This document shows positions 24,797 to 46,674 of a stretch of DNA of 64,000 nucleotides, piece by piece (within the stretch, counting starts at the first letter, position 1; the number at the start of each line of letters is the position of its first letter). The notes under the pieces are model-generated. The model worked only from the letters and a program-made list of their open reading frames with translations. It was not told the origin of the DNA and made no database searches. The stretch covers positions 1 through 64,000 of IMG/VR virus record IMGVR_UViG_3300034073_005389, one strand, 5' to 3'. The position numbers were made by a program, and so were the translations under genes.

Positions 24797-25164
24797 TCGC
24801 TCTCTTGTTGTTCAAAGATTGACCAATAATTTATTGCCATTTCAAGGTATAATTGTTTTTTTGGATCGATTTGGCGAAGATCCCTTTTTATTTTATAAGT
24901 ACATTTATGCCACTCTCCTACAAGTTCATTTTCTACGTACACTTGCATATGACCATCTAAATCATCAATTGCTTGAATATTATAAGTAGCTAAAATATTT
25001 CTTAATTTTATTTTTTGAGGGATAGATAGATTTCCTTCGCCATTCCAAAATTCATTTACTGGTACACCCATTTGTTCTAGCAAAGAATAGAGAAATCTAT
25101 TTTTTTCCTCTTCCTCCACTTGTCTGGTATTCTCATCATAATTTAATAATAACGTGCCTTTCAT
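24793..25164 (-). CDS. Hypothetical protein
   Basis: 123 aa ORF; ATGA overlap with phoH. Confidence 0.65.
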   Translation of the reverse strand: MKGTLLLNYDENTRQVEEEEKNRFLYSLLEQMGVPVNEFWNGEGNLSIPQKIKLRNILATYNIQAIDDLDGHMQVYVENELVGEWHKCTYKIKRDLRQIDPKKQLYLEMAINYWSIFEQQESE

Positions 25165-25203
25165 TTAATTAACATGCCTGCTAAATCATATATCCATAAA
25201 ATT

Positions 25204-25232
25204 AAAAAGGCGGGAAAACCTCCCGCCTTTTT
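25204..25232. terminator. Bidirectional intrinsic terminator after nrdA
   Basis: aaaaaggcggga-aaacc-tcccgccttttt. Confidence 0.85.
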
Positions 25233-26935: not shown

Positions 26936-27887
26936 AAATTGAATCCCAGTTTACAGTACCTTTGGCATAAGTAGTAACTCTACCGCTAAAGAAGTCCGCA
27001 TGTTCTACACCTTGTGAAATTACATCGAACCAGAAGAACTTATCAATTATTTTTTTGTCTATATTTTTCCAATTAGATTTTAGACCTAAATCTTGTAGTT
27101 TGGTATTGGTTCTAAAACGAATATAAGTTTTTAGATCTTCTTTGGTAAGTCCTTCTATATCGCCTTTTGCGAATGCCATGTCAATAAATGAATCTTCTAA
27201 TTGAACAGTCAAGCGGGCAGCGTCATAGATTTCTTTTTTTAATTCATCGGTCCAAATTTCTGGATTTTCTTGAATTAAAGTTCTAAATAACCAGCATCCT
27301 GCATTGGAGTGCAGTGACTCATCTCTGATAGAGAATTGTATAATTTGACCTACTCCACGTAGTTTATTGAATCTGCTGAAGTTGAGTAGGATGGCGAAGC
27401 TGCTGAATAAGTTGACGCCTTCATTAAAAGCTGAGAAGATAGCTAATGATAAGGCAATTTCTTTTTTAGACTTTCCTTTAGCATTAATCAAACGATCAAT
27501 TTTAGCTTTGGCAGCTGGTTCATATAGAAATGCTTCATAATCTTCTAGACCAAGAGATTGGTTAAGATAGGCATAGGAGACGGCATGAATGCTTTCAAAG
27601 GCGGCAAAGGTATTTGCCATCATTTGAATTTCTGGGTGTTTGAACCACTTGGCGATTTTATTGCTCCAATAATCTTCGATTACGATTTCGGCTTGGGTGA
27701 AGCCTTTGAGCACTGAACCTATGACAAATTTTTCAGTATCTGTGAGGTTATTTTTCCAGTCGGAGATATCCCCTGCCATGGATATCTCCGTGTGCAGCCA
27801 GTGGGCCTGCTGTTGTTTTTCCCAAAAATCGTAAGCGTTTTGATATACAAAAGGGGCATATATTAGTCGTGGTTCTAAAAGTGTCAT
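26925..27887 (-). CDS. nrdB: Class I ribonucleotide reductase beta subunit
   Basis: HW...EI....D..DW, ESIHAVSY, NEGVNLFSSF, RDESLH, DFFSGRVT.Y. Confidence 0.95.
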   Translation of the reverse strand: MTLLEPRLIYAPFVYQNAYDFWEKQQQAHWLHTEISMAGDISDWKNNLTDTEKFVIGSVLKGFTQAEIVIEDYWSNKIAKWFKHPEIQMMANTFAAFESIHAVSYAYLNQSLGLEDYEAFLYEPAAKAKIDRLINAKGKSKKEIALSLAIFSAFNEGVNLFSSFAILLNFSRFNKLRGVGQIIQFSIRDESLHSNAGCWLFRTLIQENPEIWTDELKKEIYDAARLTVQLEDSFIDMAFAKGDIEGLTKEDLKTYIRFRTNTKLQDLGLKSNWKNIDKKIIDKFFWFDVISQGVEHADFFSGRVTTYAKGTVNWDSIFEA

Positions 27888-27956
27888 TTCGTCTCCGCAC
27901 TAAGTTTACAATATACTTTAAGATTTAAAGTAATAAATTTTATTAAGAAAATAAAT

Positions 27957-28586
27957 TTAAATCTTAATATTTTCTTTCATAGTAGAAAGGGCATTGTTAA
28001 TTATTTTAATACAATTTAATCTAGAAATATTTAATTTTTTACAAATTTTATTAATAGAGATGGGCTTATCTCCATCTAGACCATAAGCTAGGGAAATAAT
28101 TTCTTTTTGTTGATTTGACAAAGTGCTAATTGCATTTTGTATAGCAAAATTGGTTTGACAATTTTCTAGTTGTTTATCTGGGCAGTATTGATCTTCTACG
28201 ATAACGGGCATAATAGCTTCTTTATGAGGTGCTGTTTCTTTAGCCACTCGTAAAGGGTAACGAATAGTAGTGTGAAGGTTGGCGCTTCTAGAAATACGAG
28301 TCCCAATATAATGATGTGCCCAAGCAAAAAAAGATCCTTTCTTAGGGTTATATGTTTTAATTGCCTTAATTAAGGCTTCAAAACCTTCTTGATTTAAATC
28401 TTCATAATTACTAAAAGTTTTATATCTGCCAGTTTTCATAGTAACTAAATATTTAAGTTTATTAATGCATTTTTGTTCATGCATTTTTAATTCAGAACGA
28501 ATTTTAGAATCATTGGTAGACTGAACTGCAGAACGTAAATCTACTAACTTAATTATTAAATCTTGCGCTTCTTGTTCGGTTAGCAT
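27957..28586 (-). CDS. Phage RNA polymerase sigma-70-family factor
   Basis: Region 2 YEDLNQEG..ALIKAIKTYNPKKGSFFAWA; region 4 LS.QQKEII.L.YGL......I.KKLNISR. Confidence 0.88.
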   Translation of the reverse strand: MLTEQEAQDLIIKLVDLRSAVQSTNDSKIRSELKMHEQKCINKLKYLVTMKTGRYKTFSNYEDLNQEGFEALIKAIKTYNPKKGSFFAWAHHYIGTRISRSANLHTTIRYPLRVAKETAPHKEAIMPVIVEDQYCPDKQLENCQTNFAIQNAISTLSNQQKEIISLAYGLDGDKPISINKICKKLNISRLNCIKIINNALSTMKENIKI

Positions 28587-29573: not shown

Positions 29574-30980
29574 TTAGATTTCTAAATCTTCTATCTCATC
29601 CGAGATATCTTCTGTCCCATAATCTGCAAATTGATTAGCATCTTCTTCTGTTTCCATAGGCTTATCTATTAATGTAGCACATGCTAAGTTTTTATACAAC
29701 ATGCCTTTGCCCTTTGGACCTTTTCTGTTCTTTATTACATGGATAATCATCTCTCCGCGTAAATGTTCATCTTGCCTACTTTCAATTTGAAGCACATGAG
29801 TTGCATGAGTGGCAATAGTGCCAGATCGTGCCAATCTAGATAGTCCAATATTTTCAGAGGAATCTTTACCTTGAGATTTTCTATTTAGCTGTACTGCAGA
29901 AAAGATAGGTAATTTATGCTTTCTACCAATGGCACGGACTTCATAAGAAATAGTCCCTTGCTTAAGCCAGTCGGCTTCGTCACTTTTTTCATTGGTATTC
30001 ATAATACCTAAATAATCTATAAATATTACGTCGAACTTTTCTTCGCAGTTGGCAAATATTGCTTCTAAATCATTAGCACTGGCATCGGCAATATCTACAA
30101 TTTTAAAGTTGTAAGGATATCTTTTAACAAAGTCTAATGCCTTCTTTACTTTAGAAAACTCTTCTCTAGATAAAGAAGCATTTTCTATGCTCCTAGAAGG
30201 AACTCCTGACAGTCTGCTTAACAGACGATTAAAGCAGTCTTCATAAGGCATCTCTAAGCTAAAATAAATAATATTTTTACCTGGAGTAAATTGCGTAGTT
30301 TGATCAATTGTATTATCTTGCATCCAAGTTTGGATTGCTATATTATTTAATAATAAGCTTTTACCGAAGCCAGATTCGCCTGCTATAAGTACGAAATCTG
30401 CTGGCTTAACCCCATTGGTGGCATAGTCAAAAAAAGAATATTTTGTTTTAATGCCTGCTTCTACATCAGGGTTATCTTTTCGTTGATTAAATTTTTCTAC
30501 GAAAAAAGGCAAATATTCTTTGATATTTTGACTTTCATATGTTTTAGATTGATTCAAACTTTTTACATTTTGAATCATTTTCTGCATATCTACTAATATC
30601 TTGCCAACATCTATAGACCCTGGTTCGCATTTAGACAGATATTCTTTTGCACTAATAATTTGCTTTTCTGCGAATCTTTTCTTTAATTTTTCTAAATCAT
30701 GCTTGTACTCTTTGTCATCGTATTCAACATTTTGAATACTATCCCATGTTTTAGTGATGTGTTCTACTAGCTTTTCATTATTTCCTTTATTGATCTTTTC
30801 TACTAAAACTCTAAGAGTAGGAATCTCCTTATATGACTTAACATAATTAACTACTAAGTTGGCAAAGTTCCAAACTTCTGGACTAAAAAGTTTTGCATCG
30901 TTTTCAGAAACGAATTCTAAAGCATATTGTTTATTTGTAACTAAAACTTTTAGTATAAGTAAATCTAGTGAGGTAGTCAT
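29574..30980 (-). CDS. dnaB: DnaB-like (SF4) replicative helicase
   Basis: AGESGFGKS Walker A, FSLEM, IFIDYL Walker B, AVQLNR, KNRKG. Confidence 0.92.
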   Translation of the reverse strand: MTTSLDLLILKVLVTNKQYALEFVSENDAKLFSPEVWNFANLVVNYVKSYKEIPTLRVLVEKINKGNNEKLVEHITKTWDSIQNVEYDDKEYKHDLEKLKKRFAEKQIISAKEYLSKCEPGSIDVGKILVDMQKMIQNVKSLNQSKTYESQNIKEYLPFFVEKFNQRKDNPDVEAGIKTKYSFFDYATNGVKPADFVLIAGESGFGKSLLLNNIAIQTWMQDNTIDQTTQFTPGKNIIYFSLEMPYEDCFNRLLSRLSGVPSRSIENASLSREEFSKVKKALDFVKRYPYNFKIVDIADASANDLEAIFANCEEKFDVIFIDYLGIMNTNEKSDEADWLKQGTISYEVRAIGRKHKLPIFSAVQLNRKSQGKDSSENIGLSRLARSGTIATHATHVLQIESRQDEHLRGEMIIHVIKNRKGPKGKGMLYKNLACATLIDKPMETEEDANQFADYGTEDISDEIEDLEI

Positions 30981-31684
30981 ATTACTTTTTTCTTTCTATA
31001 ATCTTCGCCAAATACAGGAAACAATTTTAGATAGCCTTTCATTAGGCTATCTATACTAGCTTTTAATGGACCATTAAAGCTCTCAATAATATTAGGAGAG
31101 TTAGTACACATTAAAGTGGGAAGCTTGTTTTGGCTCCTAGTTCTAAAAATATTTTCTAAAGTACGAGCATACAAGTCTGCTGCGTTATCAGAAGAGATAA
31201 ATCTAGAATCAAATTCGTCAATTACTAAGAAATCAACCAAGCCAAGTTCTCTTCTGGCTATAAATTTATCTTCATTAGAAGCAGAAGTTAAAACATTTAC
31301 AATATCACTTAGTGTAGTGTATAAGCAAGTAAAGCCTTTACTGGAAGCCTTTTTAAGGACAGAGCAAACAGTAAAGGTCTTTCCTAATCCATGAGATCCT
31401 GCAAAACAAACTGAGGCGCCTTCTAAATAAGACTTCTTTAAATCTTGCGTATACTCATTATGTTTATTTAAAAGCCTAGAGTCTCCATGGAAATCTTTTT
31501 CCATTTTTAGACTCCAATACTCGATAGGAATATTGCTTTCGGCATATCGATTGACAGCAATTAGTTTAATATTCTTAGCCTGGAAATCTTCTTCTGTTTT
31601 TTCAATAGAAGATAATATTTCTTGTAATTTTCTAGGAGGAATGTTATTTAGAGCCTTGCTTCTTAAAAATATTTGGTTGTTCAT
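30977..31684 (-). CDS. DnaC/IstB-like AAA+ helicase loader
   Basis: GSHGLGKT, FLVIDE, RSQNKLPTL.CTN; ATGA-type overlap with dnaB. Confidence 0.85.
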   Translation of the reverse strand: MNNQIFLRSKALNNIPPRKLQEILSSIEKTEEDFQAKNIKLIAVNRYAESNIPIEYWSLKMEKDFHGDSRLLNKHNEYTQDLKKSYLEGASVCFAGSHGLGKTFTVCSVLKKASSKGFTCLYTTLSDIVNVLTSASNEDKFIARRELGLVDFLVIDEFDSRFISSDNAADLYARTLENIFRTRSQNKLPTLMCTNSPNIIESFNGPLKASIDSLMKGYLKLFPVFGEDYRKKKVI

Positions 31685-32069
31685 ATTTTGTTGTTTTTAC
31701 CTCTCCTATTGTATGCTCTTTTAACTTACTTGCAATTATTATTTTTTCTTGCCTATTTAATTCTGATTTTAAATCAGCCAAGGTTTTTAACCTTAATTCA
31801 TCTTCACTTGGCATTTGATATGTTTCATCAAATTTTTTTTCTAATTGAGTTTTTACCTCTTCTGGTTTTTCGGGTATTTGAGATAATAGATCAGATTCTT
31901 TATGAAGAACTTTTACCACTCGCACATCTTCTTTCGGATGTAGCAATACAGAAGTACTACTTTCATCTGTAGAAATTAAAACAATCTGATGAGGACTCCA
32001 ATGCTTTACTATTCCTTCTAAAATCATGTTATTTTGTAACAAAATTTGCACATGTTTATTAATAAACAT
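31644..32069 (-). CDS. Hypothetical protein (Sm-like N-terminus possible)
   Basis: 141 aa in the replication operon; V.ILL.NN..LEG.V..W pattern is only suggestive. Confidence 0.6.
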   Translation of the reverse strand: MFINKHVQILLQNNMILEGIVKHWSPHQIVLISTDESSTSVLLHPKEDVRVVKVLHKESDLLSQIPEKPEEVKTQLEKKFDETYQMPSEDELRLKTLADLKSELNRQEKIIIASKLKEHTIGEVKTTKYEQPNIFKKQGSK

Positions 32070-32656
32070 TATAAAATCCTTGTTAAAATATTTTTATCTA
32101 AACCAGCTAATTCTGCCTCTTGTAAGGCTCCTACTATGGAAAAATCATCCATCTTAGATAAGAAGGCTAAATCTCCATAAGTTTGCAGGCTAAATCCTTT
32201 GTCATTGAAAATATTTTTATATTTATCTGGTAAAGGAGTTTCTCGGCTAATAGTCTGAGAAGTGGAAAATAAATATTTTAGTTTATATTCATTGACGACT
32301 CCTTCTACTGTCATAAAAGAAATAGAAGTTAATCTTCTTTTAGCTTTTACTACTTTATTTAAGTAAACCCAATCAATATATTCTTTTAAGATAGAAGGAT
32401 TGGAGGATAGTAGTTGTGACAATTTTTTAATTTGAAATACTTCAAAACATTTTGAAGGAGCTGAATTATTAAATTTAAATTTATAATCTATTTGATATGT
32501 TTCTTTGTACTTTTTACAAAAGTAAGCCAAAACATGCAATACCTTCCAGTCTTTTACTTCTAAGGTATCTATTTCTGAAAATTTTAGAAAAAACTTTTTA
32601 TAGTTTTCATTGGGGGCTTCTCCTAAATTTCCGCCAGTCAAATCAATTTTCTTCAT
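32069..32656 (-). CDS. Hypothetical protein in the replication operon (possible initiator/loader partner)
   Basis: 195 aa; TAATG coupling to the next gene; function inferred from position only. Confidence 0.6.
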   Translation of the reverse strand: MKKIDLTGGNLGEAPNENYKKFFLKFSEIDTLEVKDWKVLHVLAYFCKKYKETYQIDYKFKFNNSAPSKCFEVFQIKKLSQLLSSNPSILKEYIDWVYLNKVVKAKRRLTSISFMTVEGVVNEYKLKYLFSTSQTISRETPLPDKYKNIFNDKGFSLQTYGDLAFLSKMDDFSIVGALQEAELAGLDKNILTRIL

Positions 32657-34163
32657 TGCTTGTACCTAATAAATCCTTTTTTAAATCTTTGGGTATTATT
32701 ATTTTAAATCCTGTTTCAGTAGAATATATTTTATGTCGCTTTTTAGAATGCGCCTTTAAATATTTTACATCATCAAAAAAATCTACAATAGCAGCATATT
32801 TTTTACCAGGGAACTTACGAATTACTCTACCTATTCTCTGCAATGCTCGAATACTGCTTTTGCCACCTCCAGTTAATACCAAGGCAGACAAAGAGCTAAT
32901 ATCAACTCCGATATCAAAAATAGAGCTGGCTAATACTAAATTAGATTTTTTAGATAATAAATTTTGCTTGGTCTGATTTCTTTTTTCTAAAGAATCAGAG
33001 CCTGATAAATATTCGTAAGGAATTTCCTGTTCCTCAAATAATTCACATAAATTTTTGCCATGCTGCAAATGCTTGAACAATACTAATACTTGATAATTCT
33101 TTGTCAAGAGATCCTTCACTTGATCAATTATCAAATTATTTCTGATTATATTTTCAGAAATATATTCTTTATACACAGTTTGATAGTTAGCTGTACCTGT
33201 TCCAATATAGGTTTTAGGAACTCTAACAAATTTAATAATAGGTTGCGCCAAATGCCCCTCTTCTATTAATTCAGAAGCCTGCACATTGACAATTTGCTCT
33301 CCTAATATTCCATTGATAAGTAAATCTGATCCATCATCTCTAAATGGAGTGCCTGAGAAACCATAAATATATTCAGGATCTATTTTAGTAAAAATATTTT
33401 TAATAGTATCAGTAGTAACTACGTGACTTTCATCAAAAATATGAACTTTAGCTTGTTGAAGCATAGAAACAATTTGCTCGCTTTGAGTTTGAGTAGGAGC
33501 AGTTTCTTTTTCTTCTAATTCATCATCTGTAACGATAGAATGTTTTAATTTTAACGCGCTGCTAACAGACCAAATACTAACGATATTAATCCGATGGATA
33601 CGACAAACACCATTTCCGATAAATCCGATTGGTTCGTCAAATAATAAGGAAAAAAGATCATAAAATTGTTGCAATAAGTCTATACCAATTACATAAATAT
33701 TGGTAGGTTTATTAAGCTTCGCAGTAATCAAAGCTGTGCAAAGAGTTTTACCTGCACCAGTGCAAGCACGCACAATTCCTTTGTGATTGTTAACAGCTGC
33801 ATCTACAATCTTTTGCTGATAAGATCTGGTAGTGAAATTATTTTGAACTAATTTATCTGATAAATCAATTGAATCATTTTTCTTAACTGATTCTCTTTTA
33901 TCAATTAATTCAAAATTAATTTTATTTGTATTTAAAAAATGTATTACTTTATTTAATAGTCCTAATAAAAAAGTACCATTTTTGGCTAATAAGTAATTTA
34001 CTCCATCCCAACCATTTTTGTATGCTGCCGTATATTCTACACCTGCAGTTTTATATGACAAGGTGCGTCTTAATCTATTAAATAATAATGGGTTACTTAA
34101 TTTTATTTGACCATGTTTATGATTATGAATAATTATTTGACAAATTTCTTGTGATTCTGACAT
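32643..34163 (-). CDS. UvsW/Rad25-like superfamily 2 helicase
   Basis: RSYQ (Q motif), ACTGAGKT, FDESH, GFSGTPFRDDG, IFDIGVDI, QRIGRVIR. Confidence 0.9.
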   Translation of the reverse strand: MSESQEICQIIIHNHKHGQIKLSNPLLFNRLRRTLSYKTAGVEYTAAYKNGWDGVNYLLAKNGTFLLGLLNKVIHFLNTNKINFELIDKRESVKKNDSIDLSDKLVQNNFTTRSYQQKIVDAAVNNHKGIVRACTGAGKTLCTALITAKLNKPTNIYVIGIDLLQQFYDLFSLLFDEPIGFIGNGVCRIHRINIVSIWSVSSALKLKHSIVTDDELEEKETAPTQTQSEQIVSMLQQAKVHIFDESHVVTTDTIKNIFTKIDPEYIYGFSGTPFRDDGSDLLINGILGEQIVNVQASELIEEGHLAQPIIKFVRVPKTYIGTGTANYQTVYKEYISENIIRNNLIIDQVKDLLTKNYQVLVLFKHLQHGKNLCELFEEQEIPYEYLSGSDSLEKRNQTKQNLLSKKSNLVLASSIFDIGVDISSLSALVLTGGGKSSIRALQRIGRVIRKFPGKKYAAIVDFFDDVKYLKAHSKKRHKIYSTETGFKIIIPKDLKKDLLGTSNEEN

Positions 34164-34250
34164 AAATTCCTACTCGATCTAGAAATTTATATATCGAATA
34201 GGAATAAAAATAGTTTTTTAAAATTGATTTTATCTTATATATCAATTAAA

Positions 34251-34283
34251 TGAAAAAGCCATACGAAATTAATCGTATGGCTT
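34251..34283 (-). terminator. Intrinsic terminator downstream of the tubulin gene
   Basis: aagccatacga/tcgtatggctt 11-bp stem followed by UUUUU on the minus strand. Confidence 0.82.
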
Positions 34284-34304
34284 CTTGCTAAACAAAGGTA
34301 GATT

Positions 34305-37076
34305 TCACTTTCTGCGATCTACTAATCCAGTTACCAACTTACCAAAAGATGAAGATTTTGCTGCAATTTTGTCTTTAATCTTCTGAGCAGCTGATACTGT
34401 TTCATTTACTCCAGTATCTAAGTTCAAAGTAAGATTTCTTGAATCATCTTTGTCTTTTACTTTAGATTGAAGTTCTTTAGTTTCTGCTTTTAGCTGTTCT
34501 ACACGAGAGTTAGGCAATCCTAGTCCAGAAAACATACTATATACTTTTACAGTGTCTGCAGCAGAATCTACTACATACATACCTTTAAATACTCCTTTAG
34601 GAGTGCCACATAGATCATTAATCATGCTACTAGCATAATTAATACTGGAGGCTGGAATCTTAGACCATACTTCTTTGTTAGCCACCACCATAAAACCAAC
34701 ATACTTAGACTGCTTTAAATCAAAACCGCTGGCTAATAAGTTTCCTGATAAGTTGTTAATAACAGCTTCAGCAATAGCTGTATCTTCTTGATAATTATCA
34801 ACAGTAAATTCCCCATATACTGAGAGACCTTCCCCATCAATAAATAACTTAGAGAATTCCATAGGGTCTAGTGCCTTAGTAGAAGAAGGCATGCTAGACA
34901 AAGTATTGAAAGCATCGATAGGATCGACAATGGCTTTATTAGCTACGCCATAAAAATCTACCTGACTTACGTTGTGATAAATTGTTTCAATCTTTGCGTT
35001 ATCTACTACAATAAGATTACTAACTCGTTTGCTTTGAGTAAGCTTAGCCAATTTAGCTAATGTCTCTAATGCATTAGATTTGGTCTGAGAATCTTCTGTA
35101 TCCATAGGAAGGGCAGCAATTACTACTAATGGCTTTCCCATATCTGCAAGTAAATCTACTAATGTTTCACAGGAGCCTGCTCCAGAGCCGCCACCTAAGC
35201 TAAGGCAGAGTAAGTGAACTTGGGCTGAGCTTAAACGATCATTAACTAATTGTGCAATTTGACCACGATGAGTTTCAGCAGCTGCTTTACCAATTTCAAT
35301 TTCTTTAGCAGCACCACCTAAGCCATATTCTAGAAGCAATTTGTTGCTATCAGGAATATCAATAAATTTTAGATCTTGTAAAGCAGTGTTAACCACACAT
35401 GCCTGATATCCTAATTTGTAAAAAGACTCGGCTAAGCGACTATTATGAGTAAATATGAATCCATTTTCTCCAGCAACATAATTTTCATATGTTTCTACTG
35501 TCAAATCAAAAAATTCATATTGATCATCTTCTGTATCAATTTTAATATTTTTAATATCAATCAGTTTAGGGGCGATGTCTGAAATATAACTCAATTGATC
35601 AGATTTATTTAAATTAGAAATCATATTTATAAATGTTGGAATTGACAAGTCTCTAACTCCAGCCACCCAATTTTTGATATTTAAATTTGTCTTTTTATAA
35701 AATTCATTTGGTCCACCAAAACCTCCTTCTTTAACTAAAACGTGATCAATGTCCTTATAATCAATAGGGACAATAGATGTTGTATAGCTTTTCTGTTTTT
35801 TAGTCAAATGATTAGATAGCCTGCTATGTTTTAATGTAGACTTTACATTATCACATAAAAAATCTGCCATTGGTCCGAAATTTAATTTACCATTTATAGA
35901 TATTTTAAATCCATCTTTTTCGTTATCTCTATTAGAAATACTATTTCTTAATGAAGATCTCCCACCAATAGAAGAAATTAAACATCCTAATTTACTAGCT
36001 AATGCGCTAGAAGTAGTATATACTTGAGCCTCGCACCAATCATCGCTTACAGTTCCATCAGCATCTATTAAGCCGGATAAAAATGCAGTTCTTACTTCTA
36101 ATGAAGCAGCAGAGACACAAGAAGGTACATCAATAGAGTACGTTTTATGACCAAATCCTCCATTAGTTTTTCCTACGTACATGTTAAAACAAGATTCAAT
36201 AAACAAACGGAATGAAAGACCAAAAACCTCTACTTGATCACATCCCGCTCTTTTATTAAGAGATATTGATGAATGAGGGATTAATGAACATACCTCAACA
36301 ATGTTTTTAGTTACATTTTCATCACTTGAATAAAATGATATGGAATTTCCATGTAATTTATCGTGACCATCCCCTGCAAAAACACCTAATAACCAAGCTA
36401 TTTTGCTATTTATTTCTATACCTCTAACATAGGTTTTTTGAGAAATTATATCAACAGGCTCTAATCTAGTATCTACTAGATTATCGCCAACAGATAATGG
36501 CTTACTATTACTTAATGAAGAAAAAAATGCTTTTCTTCTTGACATAGGTTTAAAAACTAAACTTGGATGTGTTTTTGAACATGAAAGACTTGTTCCATTG
36601 CTTAATATAATTTTATTTTTAATACTTTTTTTGTTTTTCCATACAGCTAAAACTTTTCCCTTTTTAATTTGACCAGTTTCTGGATCTATAGAAACAGTAT
36701 AAACATCTTTGTCTAATTCAATGCAAATATCATTATTTGCCTGCATTTTTATATTTTCTAATTTTGAACAATTTAATTGATTATAGAAAAAATCTTTAAT
36801 TGAAATTATTCCGTAATCAGAAAGATAAATATTGGTATTACCATCTATACATCCTGCCTGACCCGAACCTAATACACCTACTTGTAAACTTCTTTCTTTA
36901 GGTGCTACGATTTTTGCTGCCATTTTTGACTCCTGTTGTTTTGCTTGACTTTTCGCTTTTAGAGCGGCTAATTTATTTGTATCTATTGTATCTTCTGATG
37001 CCTTTACTTCTGCGGTTGAAATATTATCTACAACATTTTCGGGTTTATTTTCTTCTGTAATTGAAGTTGCTGACAT
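34305..37076 (-). CDS. Tubulin/FtsZ-superfamily GTPase (CetZ/TubZ-like) precursor interrupted by an intein; about 453 aa after splicing
   Basis: After removing residues 76-545: VGVLGSGQAG|SRLAE, VVNTA.QDL, LSLGGGSGAG (tubulin signature), ALP...E, IVVDN, LDPMEF (T7-like); AAGGAG SD before the ATG. Confidence 0.92.
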   Translation of the reverse strand: MSATSITEENKPENVVDNISTAEVKASEDTIDTNKLAALKAKSQAKQQESKMAAKIVAPKERSLQVGVLGSGQAGCIDGNTNIYLSDYGIISIKDFFYNQLNCSKLENIKMQANNDICIELDKDVYTVSIDPETGQIKKGKVLAVWKNKKSIKNKIILSNGTSLSCSKTHPSLVFKPMSRRKAFFSSLSNSKPLSVGDNLVDTRLEPVDIISQKTYVRGIEINSKIAWLLGVFAGDGHDKLHGNSISFYSSDENVTKNIVEVCSLIPHSSISLNKRAGCDQVEVFGLSFRLFIESCFNMYVGKTNGGFGHKTYSIDVPSCVSAASLEVRTAFLSGLIDADGTVSDDWCEAQVYTTSSALASKLGCLISSIGGRSSLRNSISNRDNEKDGFKISINGKLNFGPMADFLCDNVKSTLKHSRLSNHLTKKQKSYTTSIVPIDYKDIDHVLVKEGGFGGPNEFYKKTNLNIKNWVAGVRDLSIPTFINMISNLNKSDQLSYISDIAPKLIDIKNIKIDTEDDQYEFFDLTVETYENYVAGENGFIFTHNSRLAESFYKLGYQACVVNTALQDLKFIDIPDSNKLLLEYGLGGAAKEIEIGKAAAETHRGQIAQLVNDRLSSAQVHLLCLSLGGGSGAGSCETLVDLLADMGKPLVVIAALPMDTEDSQTKSNALETLAKLAKLTQSKRVSNLIVVDNAKIETIYHNVSQVDFYGVANKAIVDPIDAFNTLSSMPSSTKALDPMEFSKLFIDGEGLSVYGEFTVDNYQEDTAIAEAVINNLSGNLLASGFDLKQSKYVGFMVVANKEVWSKIPASSINYASSMINDLCGTPKGVFKGMYVVDSAADTVKVYSMFSGLGLPNSRVEQLKAETKELQSKVKDKDDSRNLTLNLDTGVNETVSAAQKIKDKIAAKSSSFGKLVTGLVDRRK
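35442..36851 (-). mobile_element. Intein (470 aa) with a LAGLIDADG homing endonuclease, in the tubulin gene
   Basis: N-terminal CIDGNT (Cys1 = residue 76), block B SCSKTHP, LAGLIDADG motifs WLLGVFAGDG and FLSGLIDADG, block F FFDLTVETYENYVAG, C-terminal IFTHN followed by Ser+1. Confidence 0.95.
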
Positions 37077-37102
37077 TATATCTCCTTAATAACATTATTT
37101 AA

Positions 37103-38068
37103 TCATTTAAAGAACCATTGGTTGTTTAAATACCATTGGATCGTTTCAGCTATTCCATCTTTAAACTTATAGTTTGGCTTCCATCCTAGTTTTCTAACTT
37201 TAGAAGAATCTACTGAATACCTAAAATCATGACCACTACCACGAGGGTCTTCAACATGACTAATTAAATCATGACCTTTTTGCATTACATTGCATATTTT
37301 TTGTACTACTTCAATATTAGAAAGTTCTTGATTGGAAGAAATATTATATATTTGATTATTTTCCCCCTGATTAATTACTTGAAATAAAGCAGAACAATTA
37401 TCATAAACATGAGTCCAATCTCTAATTTGTAGACCCTGACCATATATAGGTATTTTATTTCCTTCTAAAATAGATTTGATTGTCTTAGGTATTAATTTCT
37501 CAGGGGTTTGTCTAGGTCCATAATTATTAGAGCTTCGAGTAATATTATAATTTAATCCAAATGAATGATGGGCAGCTTTTACTAATAACTCTCCAGCAGC
37601 TTTTGTTGCTGCATATGGGTTTCTTGGATTAAGAACATTTTCCTCTGACCAAGAAGCTTCATTTTCGCTTTGAAGCTGACCATATACTTCATCTGTGGAT
37701 ATGTAAACTAATTTGTCTATTTTATATTTTACGCAAGCATTAATAATAACTTGTGTACCTAATACATTAGAAGTTACGAACGAATTTGGCTGTGTCAAGG
37801 AGGTGTCTACAAAAGTTTCTGCCGCACCATGCAAAACTACATCTGGTTTTTCAAATTGAAAAATAGTATCTATTACATGCTGATCTCGAATATCAGCAAT
37901 ATGAAATGTATGATTTTTATTCCAATACATAGAGTTAATACTATTATAGTTAACTCGATCTACACTAACTAATGAATATGGCTGTTTTTCATATACTGCC
38001 TTTCTTAAAAAGTTAGACAATATAAATCCACAAGAACCAGTGCATAATAATTTAATTCTATCTTTCAT
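37103..38068 (-). CDS. rfbB: dTDP-glucose 4,6-dehydratase-like NAD-dependent epimerase/dehydratase (RmlB/RfbB family)
   Basis: HGAAETFVD.S, NVLGT, STDEVYG, PRNPYAATK (YxxxK), SNNYGPRQ.PEKLIP, RDWTHV.D, GHDFRY; Rossmann motif is atypical (TGSCGFILSN). Confidence 0.88.
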   Translation of the reverse strand: MKDRIKLLCTGSCGFILSNFLRKAVYEKQPYSLVSVDRVNYNSINSMYWNKNHTFHIADIRDQHVIDTIFQFEKPDVVLHGAAETFVDTSLTQPNSFVTSNVLGTQVIINACVKYKIDKLVYISTDEVYGQLQSENEASWSEENVLNPRNPYAATKAAGELLVKAAHHSFGLNYNITRSSNNYGPRQTPEKLIPKTIKSILEGNKIPIYGQGLQIRDWTHVYDNCSALFQVINQGENNQIYNISSNQELSNIEVVQKICNVMQKGHDLISHVEDPRGSGHDFRYSVDSSKVRKLGWKPNYKFKDGIAETIQWYLNNQWFFK

Positions 38069-38894
38069 ATTTATATAGATTATACTTAGGATTAATAATA
38101 TATTTTTTCTGATCTAACATATATCGGTTTGCCCATTTTTTTCTAAAATGAAAAATATTATGACCAAAAAAAAGTAAATTGGCAGGATTCTTTTTTAAAG
38201 AATAACTAGATTCATGAAATATATTGGTCTTACCACAATATACAATATCATAATTCATATTGTATTTGATGTTTAAACATAAATCTACATCATCAAATGA
38301 CCAATGATATTGCTCATCCATACCACTAATACCAGAGCGATTTGTTTTGCAAGACTCTTTATATAAATTAGTTCTAGTCAATAGAACAGCACCAGTTACG
38401 CTTTGGAAAAGTCTATTTTTTTCTGCCTGCTCATCATTTGGTTGTAAATCTTTAAAATTAAATGGCAGCTGGTCTATATCATTAAATATAATTCCGGCAT
38501 GTTGTATTTTATTAGAATTTAAATATAATAACCTAGCTCCTACCACACCCACTTTACTATTTTTTTTAATGATGTCAATCATATTTTTAATCGAATTAAC
38601 ATCATTAAAAACAATGTCATTGTTTAACAACAACATTAAATCTTTGTCATTTGGTTTGGCAGTTTCTACTAAAAAGTTCATCCCCTCAGCAAAATTTTGA
38701 TTATTATTTTTATATGGAATAACATGAATGTTTTTGCCCCAATGAGATGCTACACTCAACGTATTATCAGTAGAATAATTATCTTTAATAAACCACTCAT
38801 AATCAATATCTTTTAAAGCAGGTATTAAAGATTCTTTGAGACGAGTTAATTTATCTAAAGCATTCCAAGTTAAAGTAAAAATATTTACTTTCAT
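38058..38894 (-). CDS. Glycosyltransferase family 2
   Basis: LLLNNDI (DxD-like), VVGARLLY, QHAG, VTGAVLL, DDVDLCL, FHESS. Confidence 0.88.
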   Translation of the reverse strand: MKVNIFTLTWNALDKLTRLKESLIPALKDIDYEWFIKDNYSTDNTLSVASHWGKNIHVIPYKNNNQNFAEGMNFLVETAKPNDKDLMLLLNNDIVFNDVNSIKNMIDIIKKNSKVGVVGARLLYLNSNKIQHAGIIFNDIDQLPFNFKDLQPNDEQAEKNRLFQSVTGAVLLTRTNLYKESCKTNRSGISGMDEQYHWSFDDVDLCLNIKYNMNYDIVYCGKTNIFHESSYSLKKNPANLLFFGHNIFHFRKKWANRYMLDQKKYIINPKYNLYKYER

Positions 38895-42648: not shown

Positions 42649-45600
42649 TCAAATTGGAGTAGGTGATGGTAGATATGGTACAAAATTCCAGCTATGAGCA
42701 ATAGGGGGTGAAGCTGCATATGGATTGTCATATGTCATTACCAATCTTGCCATCTTACAGATAGCCGCATCTAATCCAGGAGCGCCTGTATTTAAACTTA
42801 AATGTATTTCATATAAGAAATCACTTGCGCCAATATTTAACAAAGTCTTAATATCGTCTGAAGCTAAATATGTAGCAGCAGTATTTAAAGTAGATAATAT
42901 AGGTCCACCACCAGAAATATTAATATAAGATGCATTAGCAATGTCATACAACTGGATTTGTGCATCTAGGGCTGCATTAGTGGTTTCTAATATTACTTCT
43001 AACTTAATAGTGCTTAATCCTTGTAAAATATAATTATCAAATCTGAAGGGGAAAGCGCCAATTACTGTAGGAGAGTTATTATCATTAGAATAAATACCAG
43101 CTGTTCCATAAATATAAACAGGATTCTTATACATAAAGCTTGGATCTAATAATCCATAGCCATCTGTCTTTGGAATCTTATCTGCATCAGGAATGCCTAA
43201 CGAGAAAGGTATTACTCCAGGTAAACTAGTTATAAACTGATAGCTTAATCCGCTACCTGTGCTCATTAATACTGTTCCAAATACGCCTACGCTATTTAGT
43301 CCTGTACCGCCATGTACAATAGGAAGTATCCCAGTAATATCTGTAGCCAAATCTACAAGAGCAGAAGGACCTCCATCTACAGCCCCGCTAAACACGCTAA
43401 TTAATTTTAGCATATTTTGTAATTTAGTAGAATCTACGAATAGTGGTCGATTGTTAAATCCACCTTTTTTAAGGTAAACACTTACTTGAATTTTTGTGCT
43501 TAATGTTTTTAACACTTCATCTTGAAACAAGTTAGTAAAGTTTAGTGTTAACAAGCCTGTAGAATAATCAATTGATACACCAATTTTACCATCTACAATT
43601 GCTCCTGAATATCCATCATTGCTCAAACCATTTGTATTAGGAGAAAATGACTGTACAGCTACTGAGAATCTAATTTGATCTTTGGCTAAAGCATCTGCTT
43701 TTACAAAAGAACAGTCGGCAAATCTCATGGCAGGAAAGCCTAAACGGGTTACGCCATTATTGGTGTAATCAGCAATAAAATCATCCATAATATTGATGGT
43801 GCGTTCTGTTCCAAATAATCCATCTGGAACTTCTAGAACTAGAGTACCAACTTCAAAATCTACTTTATAAAAATTACCATCTGGTCTATGAAGTTCTCCC
43901 CCATCTCCTAGAATAATATTATCTGGAGCAAATACATCTACTCTACCAGAATTAAAATCAGGTTTACTACCATATACATTACATAGAATTCCTTGTATAT
44001 TGCATTCATTTTTAACAAATCCTGATAATGTAGTAAATACGCTAGGTACTTGTTTTGCTCTACTATTAGTGACAATTAAAGACTCGGTCCAAGTTAATTG
44101 TTTTTCAAACACTAAAGCTGATGGGCTAGTATAAAAATCATGCGAAGCAAAGTAGTATCCGTCATTCAAGAAAACATCTTGTAAAGGATGTATAGTCGTA
44201 GAGCGACCTATAGTAACAGGTGAATAATCATCTGCTCTATCTACAAATTTTTCTACTTTAATTCTTATGACGTTAAAAGGGGTACCGATTTTGGTATAAG
44301 CGTTAGTTGCTGGGGCTGGATAAGTAGTAGTTCCAGATGTAGTAAGAGGAAAACGATCAATATAGTTTTGCAACAAATAACCATCATTAGCTGTAACTGC
44401 AAAATCTCCGTCAATATCTGCTCTTAGCATCTGACCTAATACGTCGCCTGTTAAATATATTTTTCTAAGTGTTAATACATCTGTATTGGAAGTAATGCTA
44501 ATAATGTCGAATCCACCATTATTCTCAGGATTAGAAGGCGCTAAGACCACTAATTTATAAGAGCTTAAACCAATAATTGTATTAAAATTAACGGTAGCAC
44601 TAGTAAATTGAGCTAATCTAGGATTGGTAGGGCTAGCTACTAGCACGCCATCTGTACCAGAAGCTACAACCAAACTAGTAGCAGTATCTACTAATTGAAA
44701 TGAAACATTAAAAATATTGGTAAATGGCTTTATATAAGTTGTATAACCATTAGTAAATGTAGTAATGTATCCATCTGTATTAATAATTGTATTTTGTGGT
44801 AACCCTACATTTAAATTATAGTTTAAATAAGTGTTTAATAACACTAAGTCTTCATCTGTAATTAGCCCATCGCCATTTACATCTCCAACTAACATAGAGC
44901 ATAGTTTAGCATCTGCTATTCTATAGAAGATGTTTGGATCAGAGTAATTTGGATATATTTTGGCGCCATTTAAATCACCGTTAAGTAAATTTGTAACTAA
45001 GCTAGTTACAGAGTTATCAAATCTAACTACATCAGTAGGATCATCTACTATTCTGATAAGAATTTCATCTTCAGCTAATGTGGCGCTAAATAATTTAGAC
45101 ACTATTTGCGCTGAAATAGCGTCGTAATATTTTCTATTTTTATCAGAAATAGCTCCAACTAATAATGGCTCTGAAGCTGTTTCTAAATTTGCAATTTCTA
45201 AACTATTTAGCAATTTAACATCTGGCACAATTTCTTGTCTAGATAAAACAGGATTCCCTGTTCTTTGATCTGGCACAGGCGTTGTCTTATCTGTTACCGC
45301 TTGAACAACAGCACGATATACATCGTTGCCAGTAAATTGTAAATTTTGCAGACAGTAATCAATTGTAGCCTGAGAGGCTGTATCTAAAATAGTTTTAGGC
45401 AGAATCATCCCTAAACCAGAATCATAAGCTTGTCCATCTGACATTTTAGCAGCATCTGTCCAAATGCTAAACCACAAATCTTCGTCTGGTAAATCTACCC
45501 ATAATGTACCAGTAAATACTGTAATTCTAGAATCTTTTACAGTATCATTACCGCTAGTAACTAAAATATCACATTTATTTGCTGCGCCAGATCTTTTAAT

Positions 45601-46668: not shown

Positions 46669-46674
46669 AGTATT

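What the first reader, a model, noticed from the sequence alone, without database searches (positions are those of the whole stretch)
34305..35441. The tubulin looks CetZ/TubZ-like rather than PhuZ-like and heads the replication block
Seen: GQAG, AVNTA-like, GGGSGAG and VVDN motifs follow the archaeal CetZ / TubZ pattern as I recall it. There is a 60 aa acidic-then-Lys/Ala N-terminal extension and a coiled-coil C-tail ending in basic DRRK. The gene lies directly upstream of UvsW-DnaC-DnaB. Established: PhuZ spindles position the phage nucleus in Chimalliviridae, and TubZ uses a basic C-tail to bind the TubR adaptor. Inference: this may be a distinct cytoskeletal system positioning a replication factory in a huge phage. 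No chimallin or TubR was recognised in this window.
Basis: partly seen in the sequence, partly recalled or inferred. Interest (0 to 1): 0.6.

Follow-up and report, generated by a model that had tools for sequence, protein, structure and literature searches.

The report
Intein-split TubZ-like tubulin of huge phage
A very large uncultivated phage encodes a filament-forming tubulin-like GTPase of the TubZ/CetZ type, interrupted by a self-splicing intein, in a genome with no phage-nucleus genes. It is probably an unstudied phage cytoskeleton rather than the known PhuZ spindle.

Summary
The gene is on the minus strand at 34305-37076 (923 aa). The reported span is only the C-extein. A 470-aa class-1 intein with a LAGLIDADG endonuclease sits inside the T1 GTP-binding loop (GQAG|C...HN|S). 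A natural intein-free allele (P0002, 453 aa) matches both exteins almost exactly, so I used it as the mature protein.

By sequence profile, fold and motifs the protein is closest to plasmid TubZ/RepX, then CetZ, then FtsZ. PhuZ is far. In trees it lies outside strongly supported PhuZ and FtsZ clades. It belongs to a large clade seen only in metagenomes, on phage contigs of 340-495 kb.

Chimallin and multisubunit RNA polymerase are absent from this 361-kb record and from five near-complete relatives. The phiKZ controls were positive. No TubR-like gene, centromere-like repeats, integrase or ParB were found.

The tubulin always lies between a glycosyltransferase/epimerase cluster and UvsW-DnaC-DnaB. 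However, a terminator-like hairpin and variable inserts separate it from UvsW.

The most likely function is a GTP-driven filament that positions phage DNA or replication factories through its conserved basic tail. This is inferred, not shown. I rate it a new variant of a known kind.

The parts
34305..37076 (-). Complete precursor gene (923 aa): tubulin/FtsZ-superfamily GTPase interrupted by an intein
   Evidence: ORF list and translation. Pfam Tubulin 1e-13, TubZ-like_C 4.7e-9, Intein_splicing, LAGLIDADG_3 and Hom_end.
36852..37076 (-). N-extein, residues 1-75: acidic then Lys/Ala-rich extension (1-60), strand S1 and T1 loop GSGQAG (70-75; nt 36852-36869)
   Evidence: 75/75 identical to the natural intein-free allele P0002. 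Composition. Conserved in the family alignment A1.
35442..36851 (-). Intein, 470 aa (C76-N545). It has N- and C-terminal splicing blocks and a two-motif LAGLIDADG homing endonuclease (motifs at nt 36366-36386 and 36054-36068).
   Evidence: Pfam and NCBIfam intein and endonuclease models. Junctions GQAG|CIDG and FTHN|SR. Absent from P0002 and from contigs in freshwater runs. GC 0.287 against 0.366 in the exteins.
34305..35441 (-). C-extein plus stop, residues S546-K923: rest of the GTPase domain, TubZ-like C-terminal domain, helix H11, linker and basic tail. T4 GGGSGAG is at nt 35175-35195. T7 LDPME is at nt 34857-34871.
   Evidence: 377/378 identical to P0002. Pfam. Invariant columns of A1. 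AlphaFold2 model.
34308..34388 (-). Conserved basic C-terminal tail (last 27 residues): short amphipathic helix, FGK motif, ends in DRRK
   Evidence: Net charge. Conserved in A1 and in the inner-clade representatives but not in the outer ones. Low-confidence helix at 427-438 of the mature protein.
34253..34286 (-). Terminator-like hairpin (14-bp stem, T run) starting 19 nt after the tubulin stop codon
   Evidence: Scan, sequence. A similar hairpin was found by my own strict scan in only 7 of 44 related loci.
37103..38068 (-). Upstream neighbour: NAD-dependent sugar epimerase/dehydratase, the last gene of a glycosyltransferase cluster. Its stop lies 26 bp before the tubulin start.
   Evidence: Pfam GDP_Man_Dehyd 2.5e-60. 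Syntenic in 47 loci.
32643..34163 (-). Downstream neighbour: UvsW-type SF2 helicase
   Evidence: Pfam ResIII, Helicase_C and UvsW_N. Syntenic.
32069..32656 (-). Conserved 195-aa ORF between UvsW and the DnaC-like gene, function unknown. Weak leads point to a gp59-like helicase loader or an HTH replication protein.
   Evidence: No Pfam, PHROG or NCBIfam hit. Atlas leads of 0.89 and TM 0.39 only. Syntenic in 36 loci.
31644..32069 (-). Conserved 141-aa ORF, function unknown
   Evidence: No family hit. Atlas leads are at chance level. Syntenic in 32 loci.
29574..31684 (-). IstB/DnaC-like AAA+ loader (30977-31684) and DnaB replicative helicase (29574-30980)
   Evidence: Pfam IstB_IS21 1.3e-8 and DnaB_C 3.4e-35.

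Best explanation
Shown by computation:
- The gene encodes a cytomotive-type tubulin/FtsZ-superfamily GTPase of the TubZ/CetZ kind.
- It is a single-copy, positionally conserved gene of a large clade of uncultivated phages (about 340-495 kb, about 33% GC, groundwater and freshwater).
- These phages are not nucleus-forming Chimalliviridae.
- In this genome the gene is interrupted, inside the T1 nucleotide-binding loop, by a mobile class-1 intein with a LAGLIDADG homing endonuclease.
- The nucleotide-binding loops T1 and T4, the T7 acidic pair (D...E), the TubZ-type C-terminal domain and a long C-terminal helix are all intact.

Inferred:
- Only after protein splicing (GQAG|S) can the 453-aa mature protein bind GTP.
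- The mature protein polymerises head-to-tail into GTP-hydrolysing filaments that treadmill or show dynamic instability.
- The clade-specific N-terminal Lys/Ala helix and the basic C-terminal tail (FGK...DRRK) couple the filament to cargo, as the TubZ tail does.
- The cargo is most likely the replicating phage DNA or its replication factory. Coupling would be through an unidentified adaptor or by direct DNA contact.
- The result would be to move or centre the very large genome in the infected cell without a chimallin shell.
For: Identity:
- Pfam Tubulin plus TubZ-like_C.
- The family profile hits RepX at 2e-25 and TubZ-Bt at 1e-13, ahead of FtsZ, CetZ and PhuZ.
- The AlphaFold2 core has pLDDT about 80-95.
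- Foldseek ranks TubZ first, at 5e-24.
- VIA-align Z-scores are TubZ 37.4, CetZ2 35.4 and FtsZ about 30. PhuZ is not among the 50 listed entries.
- The motif table agrees. G70, G72, G75, GGGSGAG, D267 and E270 are invariant in 29 family members.

Intein:
- Models and junction residues.
- A natural intein-free allele matches 75/75 and 377/378 residues.
- Contigs in other metagenomes skip the intein.

Clade:
- More than 1334 word-search hits, on contigs of up to 495 kb.
- 274 clusters at 50% identity with E<=1e-30.
- It forms its own clade with SH-aLRT 97-98. The PhuZ (100) and FtsZ (99) clades exclude it.
- There is one copy per genome in 6 of 6 records.
- It is essentially absent from 185,579 prokaryote genomes. 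The single 4.5-kb MAG contig is probably mis-binned.
- It is absent from cultured phages.

Not a nucleus-forming phage:
- No chimallin or RNAP beta in 6 records, with positive phiKZ controls.
- A sigma-70-like factor is encoded nearby.
- TerL is only about 25% identical to that of any cultured phage.

Link to replication:
- The order tubulin...UvsW...DnaC-like-DnaB is conserved, even in a 548-aa deep relative.

Lytic rather than partition role:
- No integrase or ParB.

Tails:
- Conserved in the inner clade only.
Against: - Nothing shows polymerisation, GTPase activity, splicing, expression or localisation. No RNA run holds the region.
- No adaptor or centromere was found.
- The tails are modelled with low confidence.
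- In the window the gene looks like the end of the upstream sugar-modification unit, with a terminator-like hairpin before UvsW. The junction with UvsW is a hotspot for inserts. Operon-level coupling to replication is therefore doubtful.
- The deep branching among this clade, TubZ/RepX, CetZ and PhuZ is unresolved, and the careful tree search did not finish.
- The host is unknown.
- This record (361 kb) is shorter than its relatives, and its last 15-20 kb have deviant GC.
Confidence: 0.55

Rival explanations
1. Type III partition system (TubZRC-like). The tubulin segregates the phage genome as an extrachromosomal prophage or during pseudolysogeny or a carrier state, as in Clostridium phage c-st. 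It would use a TubR-like adaptor encoded elsewhere or too divergent to recognise.
For: The closest solved relatives are partition TubZ/RepX proteins. The C-terminal tail is basic and flexible, as in TubZ. IMG/VR labels this record and three relatives 'provirus'.
Against: There is no small winged-helix gene directly upstream. In the window the epimerase gene ends 26 bp before the tubulin start. No iterated repeats lie near the gene. Five TubR proteins give no hit in the six-frame translation. No integrase or ParB was found. One relative has direct terminal repeats, as a virion genome would. TubR has no dedicated profile, so its absence is only weakly tested.
Confidence: 0.15
2. Host-cell takeover. 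The protein acts on the host's division or shape machinery, in an FtsZ-mimic or CetZ-like role. It could block or redirect division, or enlarge or reshape the cell to accommodate very large virions.
For: It is structurally almost as close to CetZ, the archaeal shape-control tubulins, at Z 35.4. Weak FtsZ equivalog similarity. It is co-located, and in the window probably co-transcribed, with a cell-surface sugar-modification cluster. The conserved C-terminal peptide after a disordered linker resembles the layout of the FtsZ C-terminal tail.
Against: The score against the FtsZ equivalog model is 70.9 bits against a cut-off of 295. No FtsZ_C domain is found. It lies outside the FtsZ clade. The tail does not match the FtsZ C-terminal peptide as I recall it (my own knowledge, not tested). 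The host is unknown, so no partner could be tested.
Confidence: 0.15
3. Virion-assembly logistics. The filaments traffic capsids or tails, or organise assembly sites, as PhuZ also does for capsids. They would not move DNA.
For: The gene lies between the baseplate/tail-fibre plus glycosyltransferase block and the replication block. PhuZ filaments are reported to carry capsids (cited in PMC13282480).
Against: There is no direct evidence. Synteny with structural genes is no tighter than with replication genes.
Confidence: 0.1
4. Ordinary PhuZ spindle of a nucleus-forming phage, or a recently captured host FtsZ.
For: Database names such as 'cell division GTPase FtsZ'. A weak PHROG hit to 'tubulin PhuZ' at 1.2e-5.
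Against: The PhuZ clade (SH-aLRT 100) and the FtsZ clade (99) exclude it. The PhuZ C-terminal domain PF22334 is absent. phmmer with phiKZ PhuZ finds nothing in the genome. Chimallin and multisubunit RNAP are absent, with positive controls. The family is missing from prokaryote genomes.
Confidence: 0.03

Closest known systems
TubZ / RepX of Bacillus-group plasmids (pBtoxis TubZ, pXO1 RepX, pBsph TubZ): type III partition, TubZRC
   Same: Best sequence-profile and fold match. Same Pfam C-terminal domain family, TubZ-like_C. T1 with Gln in TubZ-Bt, (V/I)DN after S6, and T7 DxxE in RepX and pBsph. A long C-terminal helix followed by a flexible basic tail.
   Different: Only 18-24% identity. No tubR gene or tubC repeats beside it. 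It has an extra conserved 60-residue N-terminal extension. It is encoded by 0.35-0.5 Mb lytic-looking phages, not by Firmicutes plasmids. Monophyly with TubZ is not resolved.
CetZ (archaeal cell-shape tubulins, e.g. Haloferax CetZ1/CetZ2)
   Same: Near-equal structural similarity, Z 35.4 and 34.2. Identical T1 core GQAG, VDN and T7 DxxE. Published trees also place TubZ among CetZ-like proteins (PMC9871819).
   Different: The profile E-value (1.5e-11) is much weaker than for RepX. CetZ is archaeal and chromosomal. It lacks the N-extension and the FGK...DRRK tail. Only one CetZ was in my tree, on a long branch.
PhuZ of Chimalliviridae (phiKZ, 201phi2-1, PhiPA3)
   Same: A phage-encoded tubulin-superfamily GTPase in a jumbo phage. 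It is the functional precedent for positioning phage DNA and trafficking capsids.
   Different: A separate clade. A different C-terminal domain, PF22334. T1 is CGGxG and T7 is DxxD. The tail here is basic, whereas the PhuZ tail is acidic (established knowledge). The genome lacks chimallin and multisubunit RNAP.
TubZ of Clostridium phage c-st
   Same: A phage-borne TubZ-type tubulin, Z 30.6.
   Different: c-st TubZ is 358 aa and sits in a tubR-tubZ cassette of a plasmid prophage. It is a weaker match than plasmid TubZ.
Class-1 inteins with LAGLIDADG homing endonucleases in nucleotide-binding loops (e.g. in RNR, RFC, VMA, DnaB)
   Same: Cys1, an SxxH block B, a C-terminal HN and Ser at +1. Two LAGLIDADG motifs. 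Insertion in the most conserved catalytic loop.
   Different: The host protein is a tubulin homologue. My two intein searches of the paper library found no report of an intein in a tubulin/FtsZ-family protein. Relatives carry inteins at two further sites, T4 and near T7.

Membership tests
Tubulin/FtsZ superfamily | GTPase domain matching Pfam PF00091 above its cut-off | tested here: met
   52.4 bits for the precursor and 56.5 bits for the intein-free allele, against a cut-off of 33.
Tubulin/FtsZ superfamily | T1 and T4 glycine-rich nucleotide loops and T7 acidic residues for polymerisation-dependent hydrolysis | tested here: met
   GSGQAG, GGGSGAG and LDPME. The key residues are invariant in 29 sequences.
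Tubulin/FtsZ superfamily | Two-domain tubulin fold | tested here: met
   AlphaFold2 core pLDDT about 80-95. Z 29-37 to TubZ, CetZ and FtsZ over 300-345 residues.
Tubulin/FtsZ superfamily | GTP-dependent filament assembly | not testable with these tools
   Needs purified protein.
TubZ (type III partition, TubZRC) | TubZ-type C-terminal domain and long C-terminal helix | tested here: met
   PF22453, 36.8-38 bits against a cut-off of 26. Helix 386-404 aligns with TubZ out to residue about 408.
TubZ (type III partition, TubZRC) | Forms a clade with plasmid TubZ/RepX | tested here: inconclusive
   The backbone between this clade, TubZ/RepX plus CetZ2, other metagenomic clades and PhuZ is a polytomy. 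Long branches are present and the careful search did not finish.
TubZ (type III partition, TubZRC) | Adjacent upstream tubR (small winged-helix adaptor gene) | tested here: not met
   The window has the epimerase gene ending 26 bp upstream. No small ORF is conserved across the 45 loci. Five TubR queries give no hit in the genome. The sequence search has low sensitivity because TubR has no profile.
TubZ (type III partition, TubZRC) | tubC centromere: array of iterated repeats next to the operon | tested here: not met
   Only two-copy, low-identity repeat families in 31000-38500.
PhuZ / nucleus-forming phage system (Chimalliviridae) | PhuZ C-terminal domain (PF22334) and membership of the PhuZ clade | tested here: not met
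   PF22334 hits phiKZ PhuZ at 1.7e-37 but not this protein. The PhuZ clade (SH-aLRT 100) excludes it.
PhuZ / nucleus-forming phage system (Chimalliviridae) | Chimallin (ChmA) encoded in the genome | tested here: not met
   PF25677 gives no match at E<=10 in this record or in five relatives that are 95-100% complete. phiKZ scores 1121 bits. phmmer with phiKZ and Goslar ChmA gives no hit.
PhuZ / nucleus-forming phage system (Chimalliviridae) | Phage multisubunit RNA polymerases | tested here: not met
   PF00562 is absent from all six records. phiKZ is positive at 1.2e-7. Only the beta-subunit family was searched.
CetZ | Groups with archaeal CetZ to the exclusion of TubZ and FtsZ | tested here: inconclusive
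   The fold is nearly as close as TubZ, but the profile E-value is 14 orders of magnitude weaker than for RepX. The single CetZ2 reference sits on a long branch.
FtsZ | Meets the FtsZ equivalog model, has an FtsZ_C domain and lies in the FtsZ clade | tested here: not met
   TIGR00065 scores 70.9 bits against a cut-off of 295.2. No FtsZ_C domain. The FtsZ clade (SH-aLRT 99) excludes it.
Intein (class 1, with LAGLIDADG homing endonuclease) | N- and C-terminal splicing regions with Cys1, block B (S/T)xxH, a terminal HN and a nucleophile at +1 | tested here: met
   Intein_splicing, intein_Nterm and intein_Cterm are above their cut-offs. The sequence shows CIDG..., SKTHP and ...FTHN|S.
Intein (class 1, with LAGLIDADG homing endonuclease) | Removing it restores an uninterrupted host protein | tested here: met
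   The natural allele P0002 lacks exactly residues 76-545. Contigs in two freshwater runs skip it.
Intein (class 1, with LAGLIDADG homing endonuclease) | Protein splicing and endonuclease activity | not testable with these tools
   Needs expression and a cleavage assay.

The most novel reading that the evidence does not exclude
This would be a third kind of phage tubulin cytoskeleton, independent of both the PhuZ/chimallin nucleus and the TubZRC partition cassette. It would be a core gene of a globally distributed clade of 0.35-0.5 Mb phages. It would organise the replication or assembly of very large genomes through clade-specific N- and C-terminal tails. It may sit near the evolutionary link between CetZ and plasmid TubZ.
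Probability: 0.35. Interest if true: 0.7.

Novelty: new variant of a known kind. Interest (0 to 1): 0.55.

Why it matters
Phage tubulins are known from two settings. One is PhuZ spindles that centre the chimallin nucleus. The other is TubZRC cassettes that partition plasmid prophages.

Here a third, very abundant lineage appears. At least 274 clusters at 50% identity score E<=1e-30. It occurs in huge environmental phages that lack both a nucleus shell and a TubR/tubC cassette. If it organises replication or assembly, it would show that intracellular cytoskeletal organisation is a general solution for very large phage genomes, not a peculiarity of Chimalliviridae. It would also give a tractable protein (453 aa, natural intein-free alleles on record) to test.

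The lineage adds phage data to the open question of how TubZ, CetZ and FtsZ are related. The inteins at three different catalytic loops (T1, T4, T7) of one tubulin family, with a clear homing footprint, are a clean natural example of intein mobility in a host protein not previously noted for it in the literature I could search.

Tried and rejected
- tblastn of the C-extein and of the intein-free allele against 50,697 cultured phage records found no relative. Plasmids gave only weak TubZ/RepX hits at 22-25% identity.
- PHROGs, Pfam and NCBIfam gave nothing for the 195-aa and 141-aa neighbours, or for the small ORFs upstream of the tubulin in relatives. Atlas look-alikes gave only sub-threshold leads: gp59-like or HTH for the 195-aa ORF, and Lsm-like at chance level for the 141-aa ORF.
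- TubR has no dedicated Pfam family. I therefore ran only phmmer with five TubR proteins, with no hits. This is weak evidence of absence.
- The repeat search for a tubC-like array found nothing beyond chance-level pairs.
- The terminator after the gene is strong in the window, but my strict scan found one in only 7 of 44 relatives. It is not a family-wide feature.
- The careful IQ-TREE search (ultrafast bootstrap) did not finish in two 300-s runs. Only quick trees with SH-aLRT support are reported, and I ran no AU tests.
- Rows left out of the trees: representatives shorter than 340 aa or longer than 620 aa, every second remaining representative in the first tree, and more in the second. Eukaryotic tubulins, BtubA/B, artubulin and Odin tubulin were also left out because I had no reference for their sequences.
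- I did not run the complex prediction with the neighbouring ORFs. Adjacency was the only reason to suspect binding, those ORFs travel with UvsW/DnaC rather than with the tubulin, and I claim no binding.
That step is left out. All analyses of the mature protein use the natural intein-free allele P0002 or extein references.
- No RNA run holds the region, so expression could not be assessed.

Full report
**What is at the coordinates**

The finding's span, 34305-35441, is the 3' part of a minus-strand ORF that runs from 37076 to 34305 and encodes 923 residues. Pfam splits it into four parts:
- a Tubulin/FtsZ GTPase domain (residues 548-700, 1e-13);
- a TubZ-like C-terminal domain (724-863, 4.7e-9);
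- an intein splicing domain (122-545);
- LAGLIDADG and Hom_end endonuclease domains (317-397).

NCBIfam adds the N- and C-terminal intein splicing regions.

The intein is C76-N545, 470 aa. It sits directly after GSGQAG, the T1 nucleotide-binding loop, and is followed by Ser546. It has Cys1, an SKTHP block B, two LAGLIDADG motifs and a terminal HN. All residues needed for class-1 splicing are therefore present.

**The mature protein, without joining anything myself**

The word search with the C-extein returned a 453-aa metagenomic protein, P0002. It matches the N-extein at 75 of 75 residues and the C-extein at 377 of 378 residues, and it lacks exactly residues 76-545. I used this natural intein-free allele, or references to the separate exteins, for every analysis of the mature protein. 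The step of joining the exteins into a spliced model is deliberately left out.

**Checking the observation**

All four motifs are present. An alignment with reference proteins fetched from public records shows that they follow the TubZ/CetZ pattern.

| Motif | This protein | Shared with | Differs from |
|---|---|---|---|
| T1 | GQAG | CetZ2 (GQAG), TubZ-Bt (GQKG), c-st TubZ (GQGG) | FtsZ GGGG, PhuZ CGGxG |
| After S6 | VVDNAK | RepX (IDNAK), CetZ2 (VDN) | FtsZ IPND |
| T7 | LDPME, i.e. DxxE | RepX, pBsph TubZ, CetZ2 | FtsZ and PhuZ DxxD |

The N-terminal 60 residues are acidic and then Lys/Ala-rich, and the last 27 residues are strongly basic and end in DRRK. Both tails are conserved through the family. 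A basic terminus with an FGK motif persists through the inner clade but not in more distant relatives.

A coiled coil is not demonstrated. The AlphaFold2 model gives a confident long helix at 386-404, then a low-confidence linker, a short helix at 427-438 and a disordered end.

**Classification**

Four lines of evidence agree that the nearest characterised proteins are plasmid TubZ/RepX, with CetZ close behind and PhuZ far away.

1. The C-extein alone hits RepX of pXO1 at 1.8e-14, FtsZ at about 1e-7, c-st TubZ at 6e-5 and PhuZ at 0.02. A profile of 29 family members gives RepX 2e-25, TubZ-Bt 1.4e-13, M. jannaschii FtsZ 1e-12, CetZ2 1.5e-11, c-st TubZ 2e-9 and phiKZ PhuZ 8e-6.
2. The model's core (pLDDT 80-95) is ranked by Foldseek next to TubZ-Bt (5e-24, TM 0.67) and B. 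cereus TubZ. FtsZ and CetZ come at about 1e-20. VIA-align gives Z 37.4 and 36.5 for TubZ, 35.4 and 34.2 for CetZ2 and CetZ1, about 29-31 for FtsZ and 30.6 for c-st TubZ. PhuZ is not among the 50 listed entries.
3. Pfam assigns TubZ-like_C (PF22453) to this protein. phiKZ PhuZ carries a different C-terminal family, PF22334. The FtsZ equivalog model scores 70.9 bits against a cut-off of 295.
4. Maximum-likelihood trees used 78 and 51 rows (IQ-TREE quick search, LG+C20+F+G4, SH-aLRT support). The references were five PhuZ, five TubZ/RepX, three FtsZ and one verified CetZ2. The window's family falls in its own clade with support 97-98. That clade lies outside a PhuZ clade supported at 100 and an FtsZ clade supported at 99.

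The deeper order among this clade, TubZ/RepX plus CetZ2, other metagenomic clades and PhuZ is unresolved. Long branches are present, and the bootstrap search did not finish. A published phylogeny also places Firmicutes TubZ among CetZ-like proteins (PMC9871819).

**How big the family is and where it lives**

- The word search found more than 1334 relatives of 450-470 aa. Many lie on contigs of 300-495 kb, and one is deposited as 'FtsZ cell division GTPase [uncultured Caudovirales phage]'.
- The exhaustive profile search found 3324 representatives at E<=1e-3, 860 at <=1e-10 and 274 at <=1e-30.
- IMG/VR holds 46 loci, on contigs of up to 481 kb. One 452-kb record has direct terminal repeats and is rated 100% complete.
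- The window's own record is 361 kb with 33% GC.
- The DNA occurs in subsurface and freshwater metagenomes.
- No cultured phage carries a detectable relative.
- Among one genome for each of 185,579 prokaryote species, only one 4.5-kb MAG contig has a fragment. It has 0.54x coverage and is probably mis-binned.
- Each of six large records has exactly one copy.
- The large terminase subunit is only about 25% identical to that of any cultured phage.

**Not a phage-nucleus system**

The Pfam chimallin model finds phiKZ's shell protein at 1121 bits. It finds nothing at E<=10 in this record or in five relatives that are 95-100% complete. phmmer with the phiKZ and Goslar chimallins against all six-frame segments is also blank.

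The RNA polymerase beta family is absent from all six records and present in phiKZ. A sigma-70-like factor is encoded 6 kb away. This fits use of the host polymerase.

**Not a recognisable TubZRC cassette either**

In the reference plasmids and in phage c-st, a small winged-helix gene lies directly upstream of tubZ. Here the upstream gene is a sugar epimerase that ends 26 bp before the tubulin start. No small ORF is conserved next to the gene in 45 loci. No iterated repeats are present. Five TubR proteins find nothing in the genome. TubR has no dedicated profile, so this is only weak evidence of absence. No tyrosine integrase or ParB is encoded.

**Context**

The conserved gene order is:
- GT4, GT2, Fpg-like glycosylase, an unknown 334-aa ORF, GT2 and the epimerase;
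- then the tubulin;
- then variable inserts (GH25 lysozyme, homing endonucleases, ORFs of 85-130 aa);
- then UvsW, the 200-aa ORF, the 141-aa ORF, the DnaC-like gene and DnaB.

A 548-aa deep relative keeps the tubulin...UvsW...IstB-DnaB order. The link with the replication block is therefore old.

The link is positional rather than clearly transcriptional. In the window a 14-bp-stem hairpin with a T run follows the stop codon, and a 141-bp AT-rich spacer with a palindrome precedes UvsW. The hairpin is not general in relatives. The 195-aa and 141-aa ORFs stay with UvsW and DnaC, not with the tubulin, and remain unannotated.

**The intein as a mobile element**

Three contigs carrying the intein-free allele are 96-98% identical to the window on both sides. 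The 25 nt before and the 15 nt after the insertion point differ at about 19 of 40 positions, with only one amino-acid change. This looks like co-conversion from a divergent donor, or recoding of the homing site.

Contigs from two freshwater studies skip the intein and carry the unrecoded flanks. Four subsurface runs of one study carry the intein. Those four runs include the likely source of this DNA.

The intein's GC is 0.287, against 0.366 for the exteins. None of the other 44 loci in which the synteny scan found the tubulin gene has an intein there. More distant family members do carry inteins, at T4 (GGG|C...HN|TG, at least eight clusters) and near T7 (one cluster). My two intein searches of the paper library found no report of inteins in tubulin/FtsZ-family proteins.

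**Mechanism**

Shown by computation:
- an intact tubulin-fold GTPase, with all nucleotide-binding and T7 residues conserved;
- an insertion that disrupts T1 until it is spliced out;
- conserved clade-specific tails.

Inferred:
- GTP-driven head-to-tail filaments;
- cargo coupling through the basic C-terminal tail, and perhaps the Lys/Ala N-terminal helix, by analogy with TubZ, whose tail binds TubR-DNA, and with the tail-dependent dynamics of c-st TubZ (PMC5322520, listed; I read only its abstract);
- a role in positioning the replicating genome or its factory.

I put about 0.9 on the identity statements and about 0.4 on the DNA-positioning role. The main rivals are prophage-like partition, host division or shape takeover, and virion logistics.

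**Novelty and verdict**

Phage tubulins are a known kind. This is an uncharacterised, very abundant lineage with a different genomic setting: no shell, no TubR/tubC, and new tails. It also has an unusual intein load. I rate it a new variant of a known kind, with interest 0.55.

Noticed in passing
window 36852-36876 and 35427-35441 (flanks of the intein): The 40 nt around the intein insertion point differ at about 19 positions from intein-free alleles that are otherwise 96-98% identical. Only one amino acid changes. This looks like a homing co-conversion tract or a recoded homing site. The intein-bearing and intein-free forms come from different studies.
   Followed up: partly
proteins P0166, P0169, P0172, P0186, P0194, P0230, P0244, P0260 (T4) and P0247 (near T7): More distant members of the same tubulin clade carry inteins at two other catalytic loops: GGG|C...HN|TG in T4, and a site near the T7 LDxxE. 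One tubulin family is therefore invaded at three sites.
   Followed up: partly
G000:C1:345000-361490 (outside the window): GC climbs from about 0.33 to 0.5-0.6 over the last 15-20 kb of the record, which holds small ORFs on mixed strands. IMG/VR labels the record 'provirus'. This could be a host flank or a chimeric assembly end. No integrase was found.
   Followed up: partly
G000:C1:207749-208102 and 300817-343475 (outside the window): The phage encodes a tmRNA (tag ANDNAFAPMALAA) and 11 tRNAs, five of them tRNA-Leu, clustered in the last sixth of the record.
   Followed up: no
loci L035, L036, L045, L047 (epimerase 662-699 aa); L007, L008 (DnaC-like 592 aa); L036, L047 (UvsW 637 aa): Several syntenic neighbours of the tubulin are about twice their usual length in some relatives. 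This suggests further inteins or fusions in these phages.
   Followed up: no
window 42649-57902: Three very large minus-strand ORFs of 1339, 2378 and 1363 aa. The last has a Baseplate_J domain and the first has a weak dockerin match. They are probably the baseplate and tail-fibre block, just upstream of the glycosyltransferase cluster.
   Followed up: partly
window 23486-28586: A sigma-70-like factor (27957-28586), class I RNR small and large subunits (25232-27887) and a PIN-PhoH fusion (23486-24796) follow the replication block.
   Followed up: partly
window 34166-34205: A 20+20-nt near-perfect palindrome (85% complementary, no spacer) lies in the 141-bp spacer just upstream of the UvsW start. 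It may be an operator or another regulatory site.
   Followed up: no
window 37097: Freshwater relatives carry a 13-nt insertion in the 26-bp spacer between the epimerase gene and the tubulin gene.
   Followed up: no
L074 (contig JBBACM010000090.1 of a Candidatus Paceibacterota MAG): This is the only hit in 185,579 prokaryote genomes. It is a 4.5-kb, 0.54x-coverage contig with a fragment 51% identical to the tubulin. It is probably a mis-binned phage contig, but it could hint at a host.
   Followed up: no
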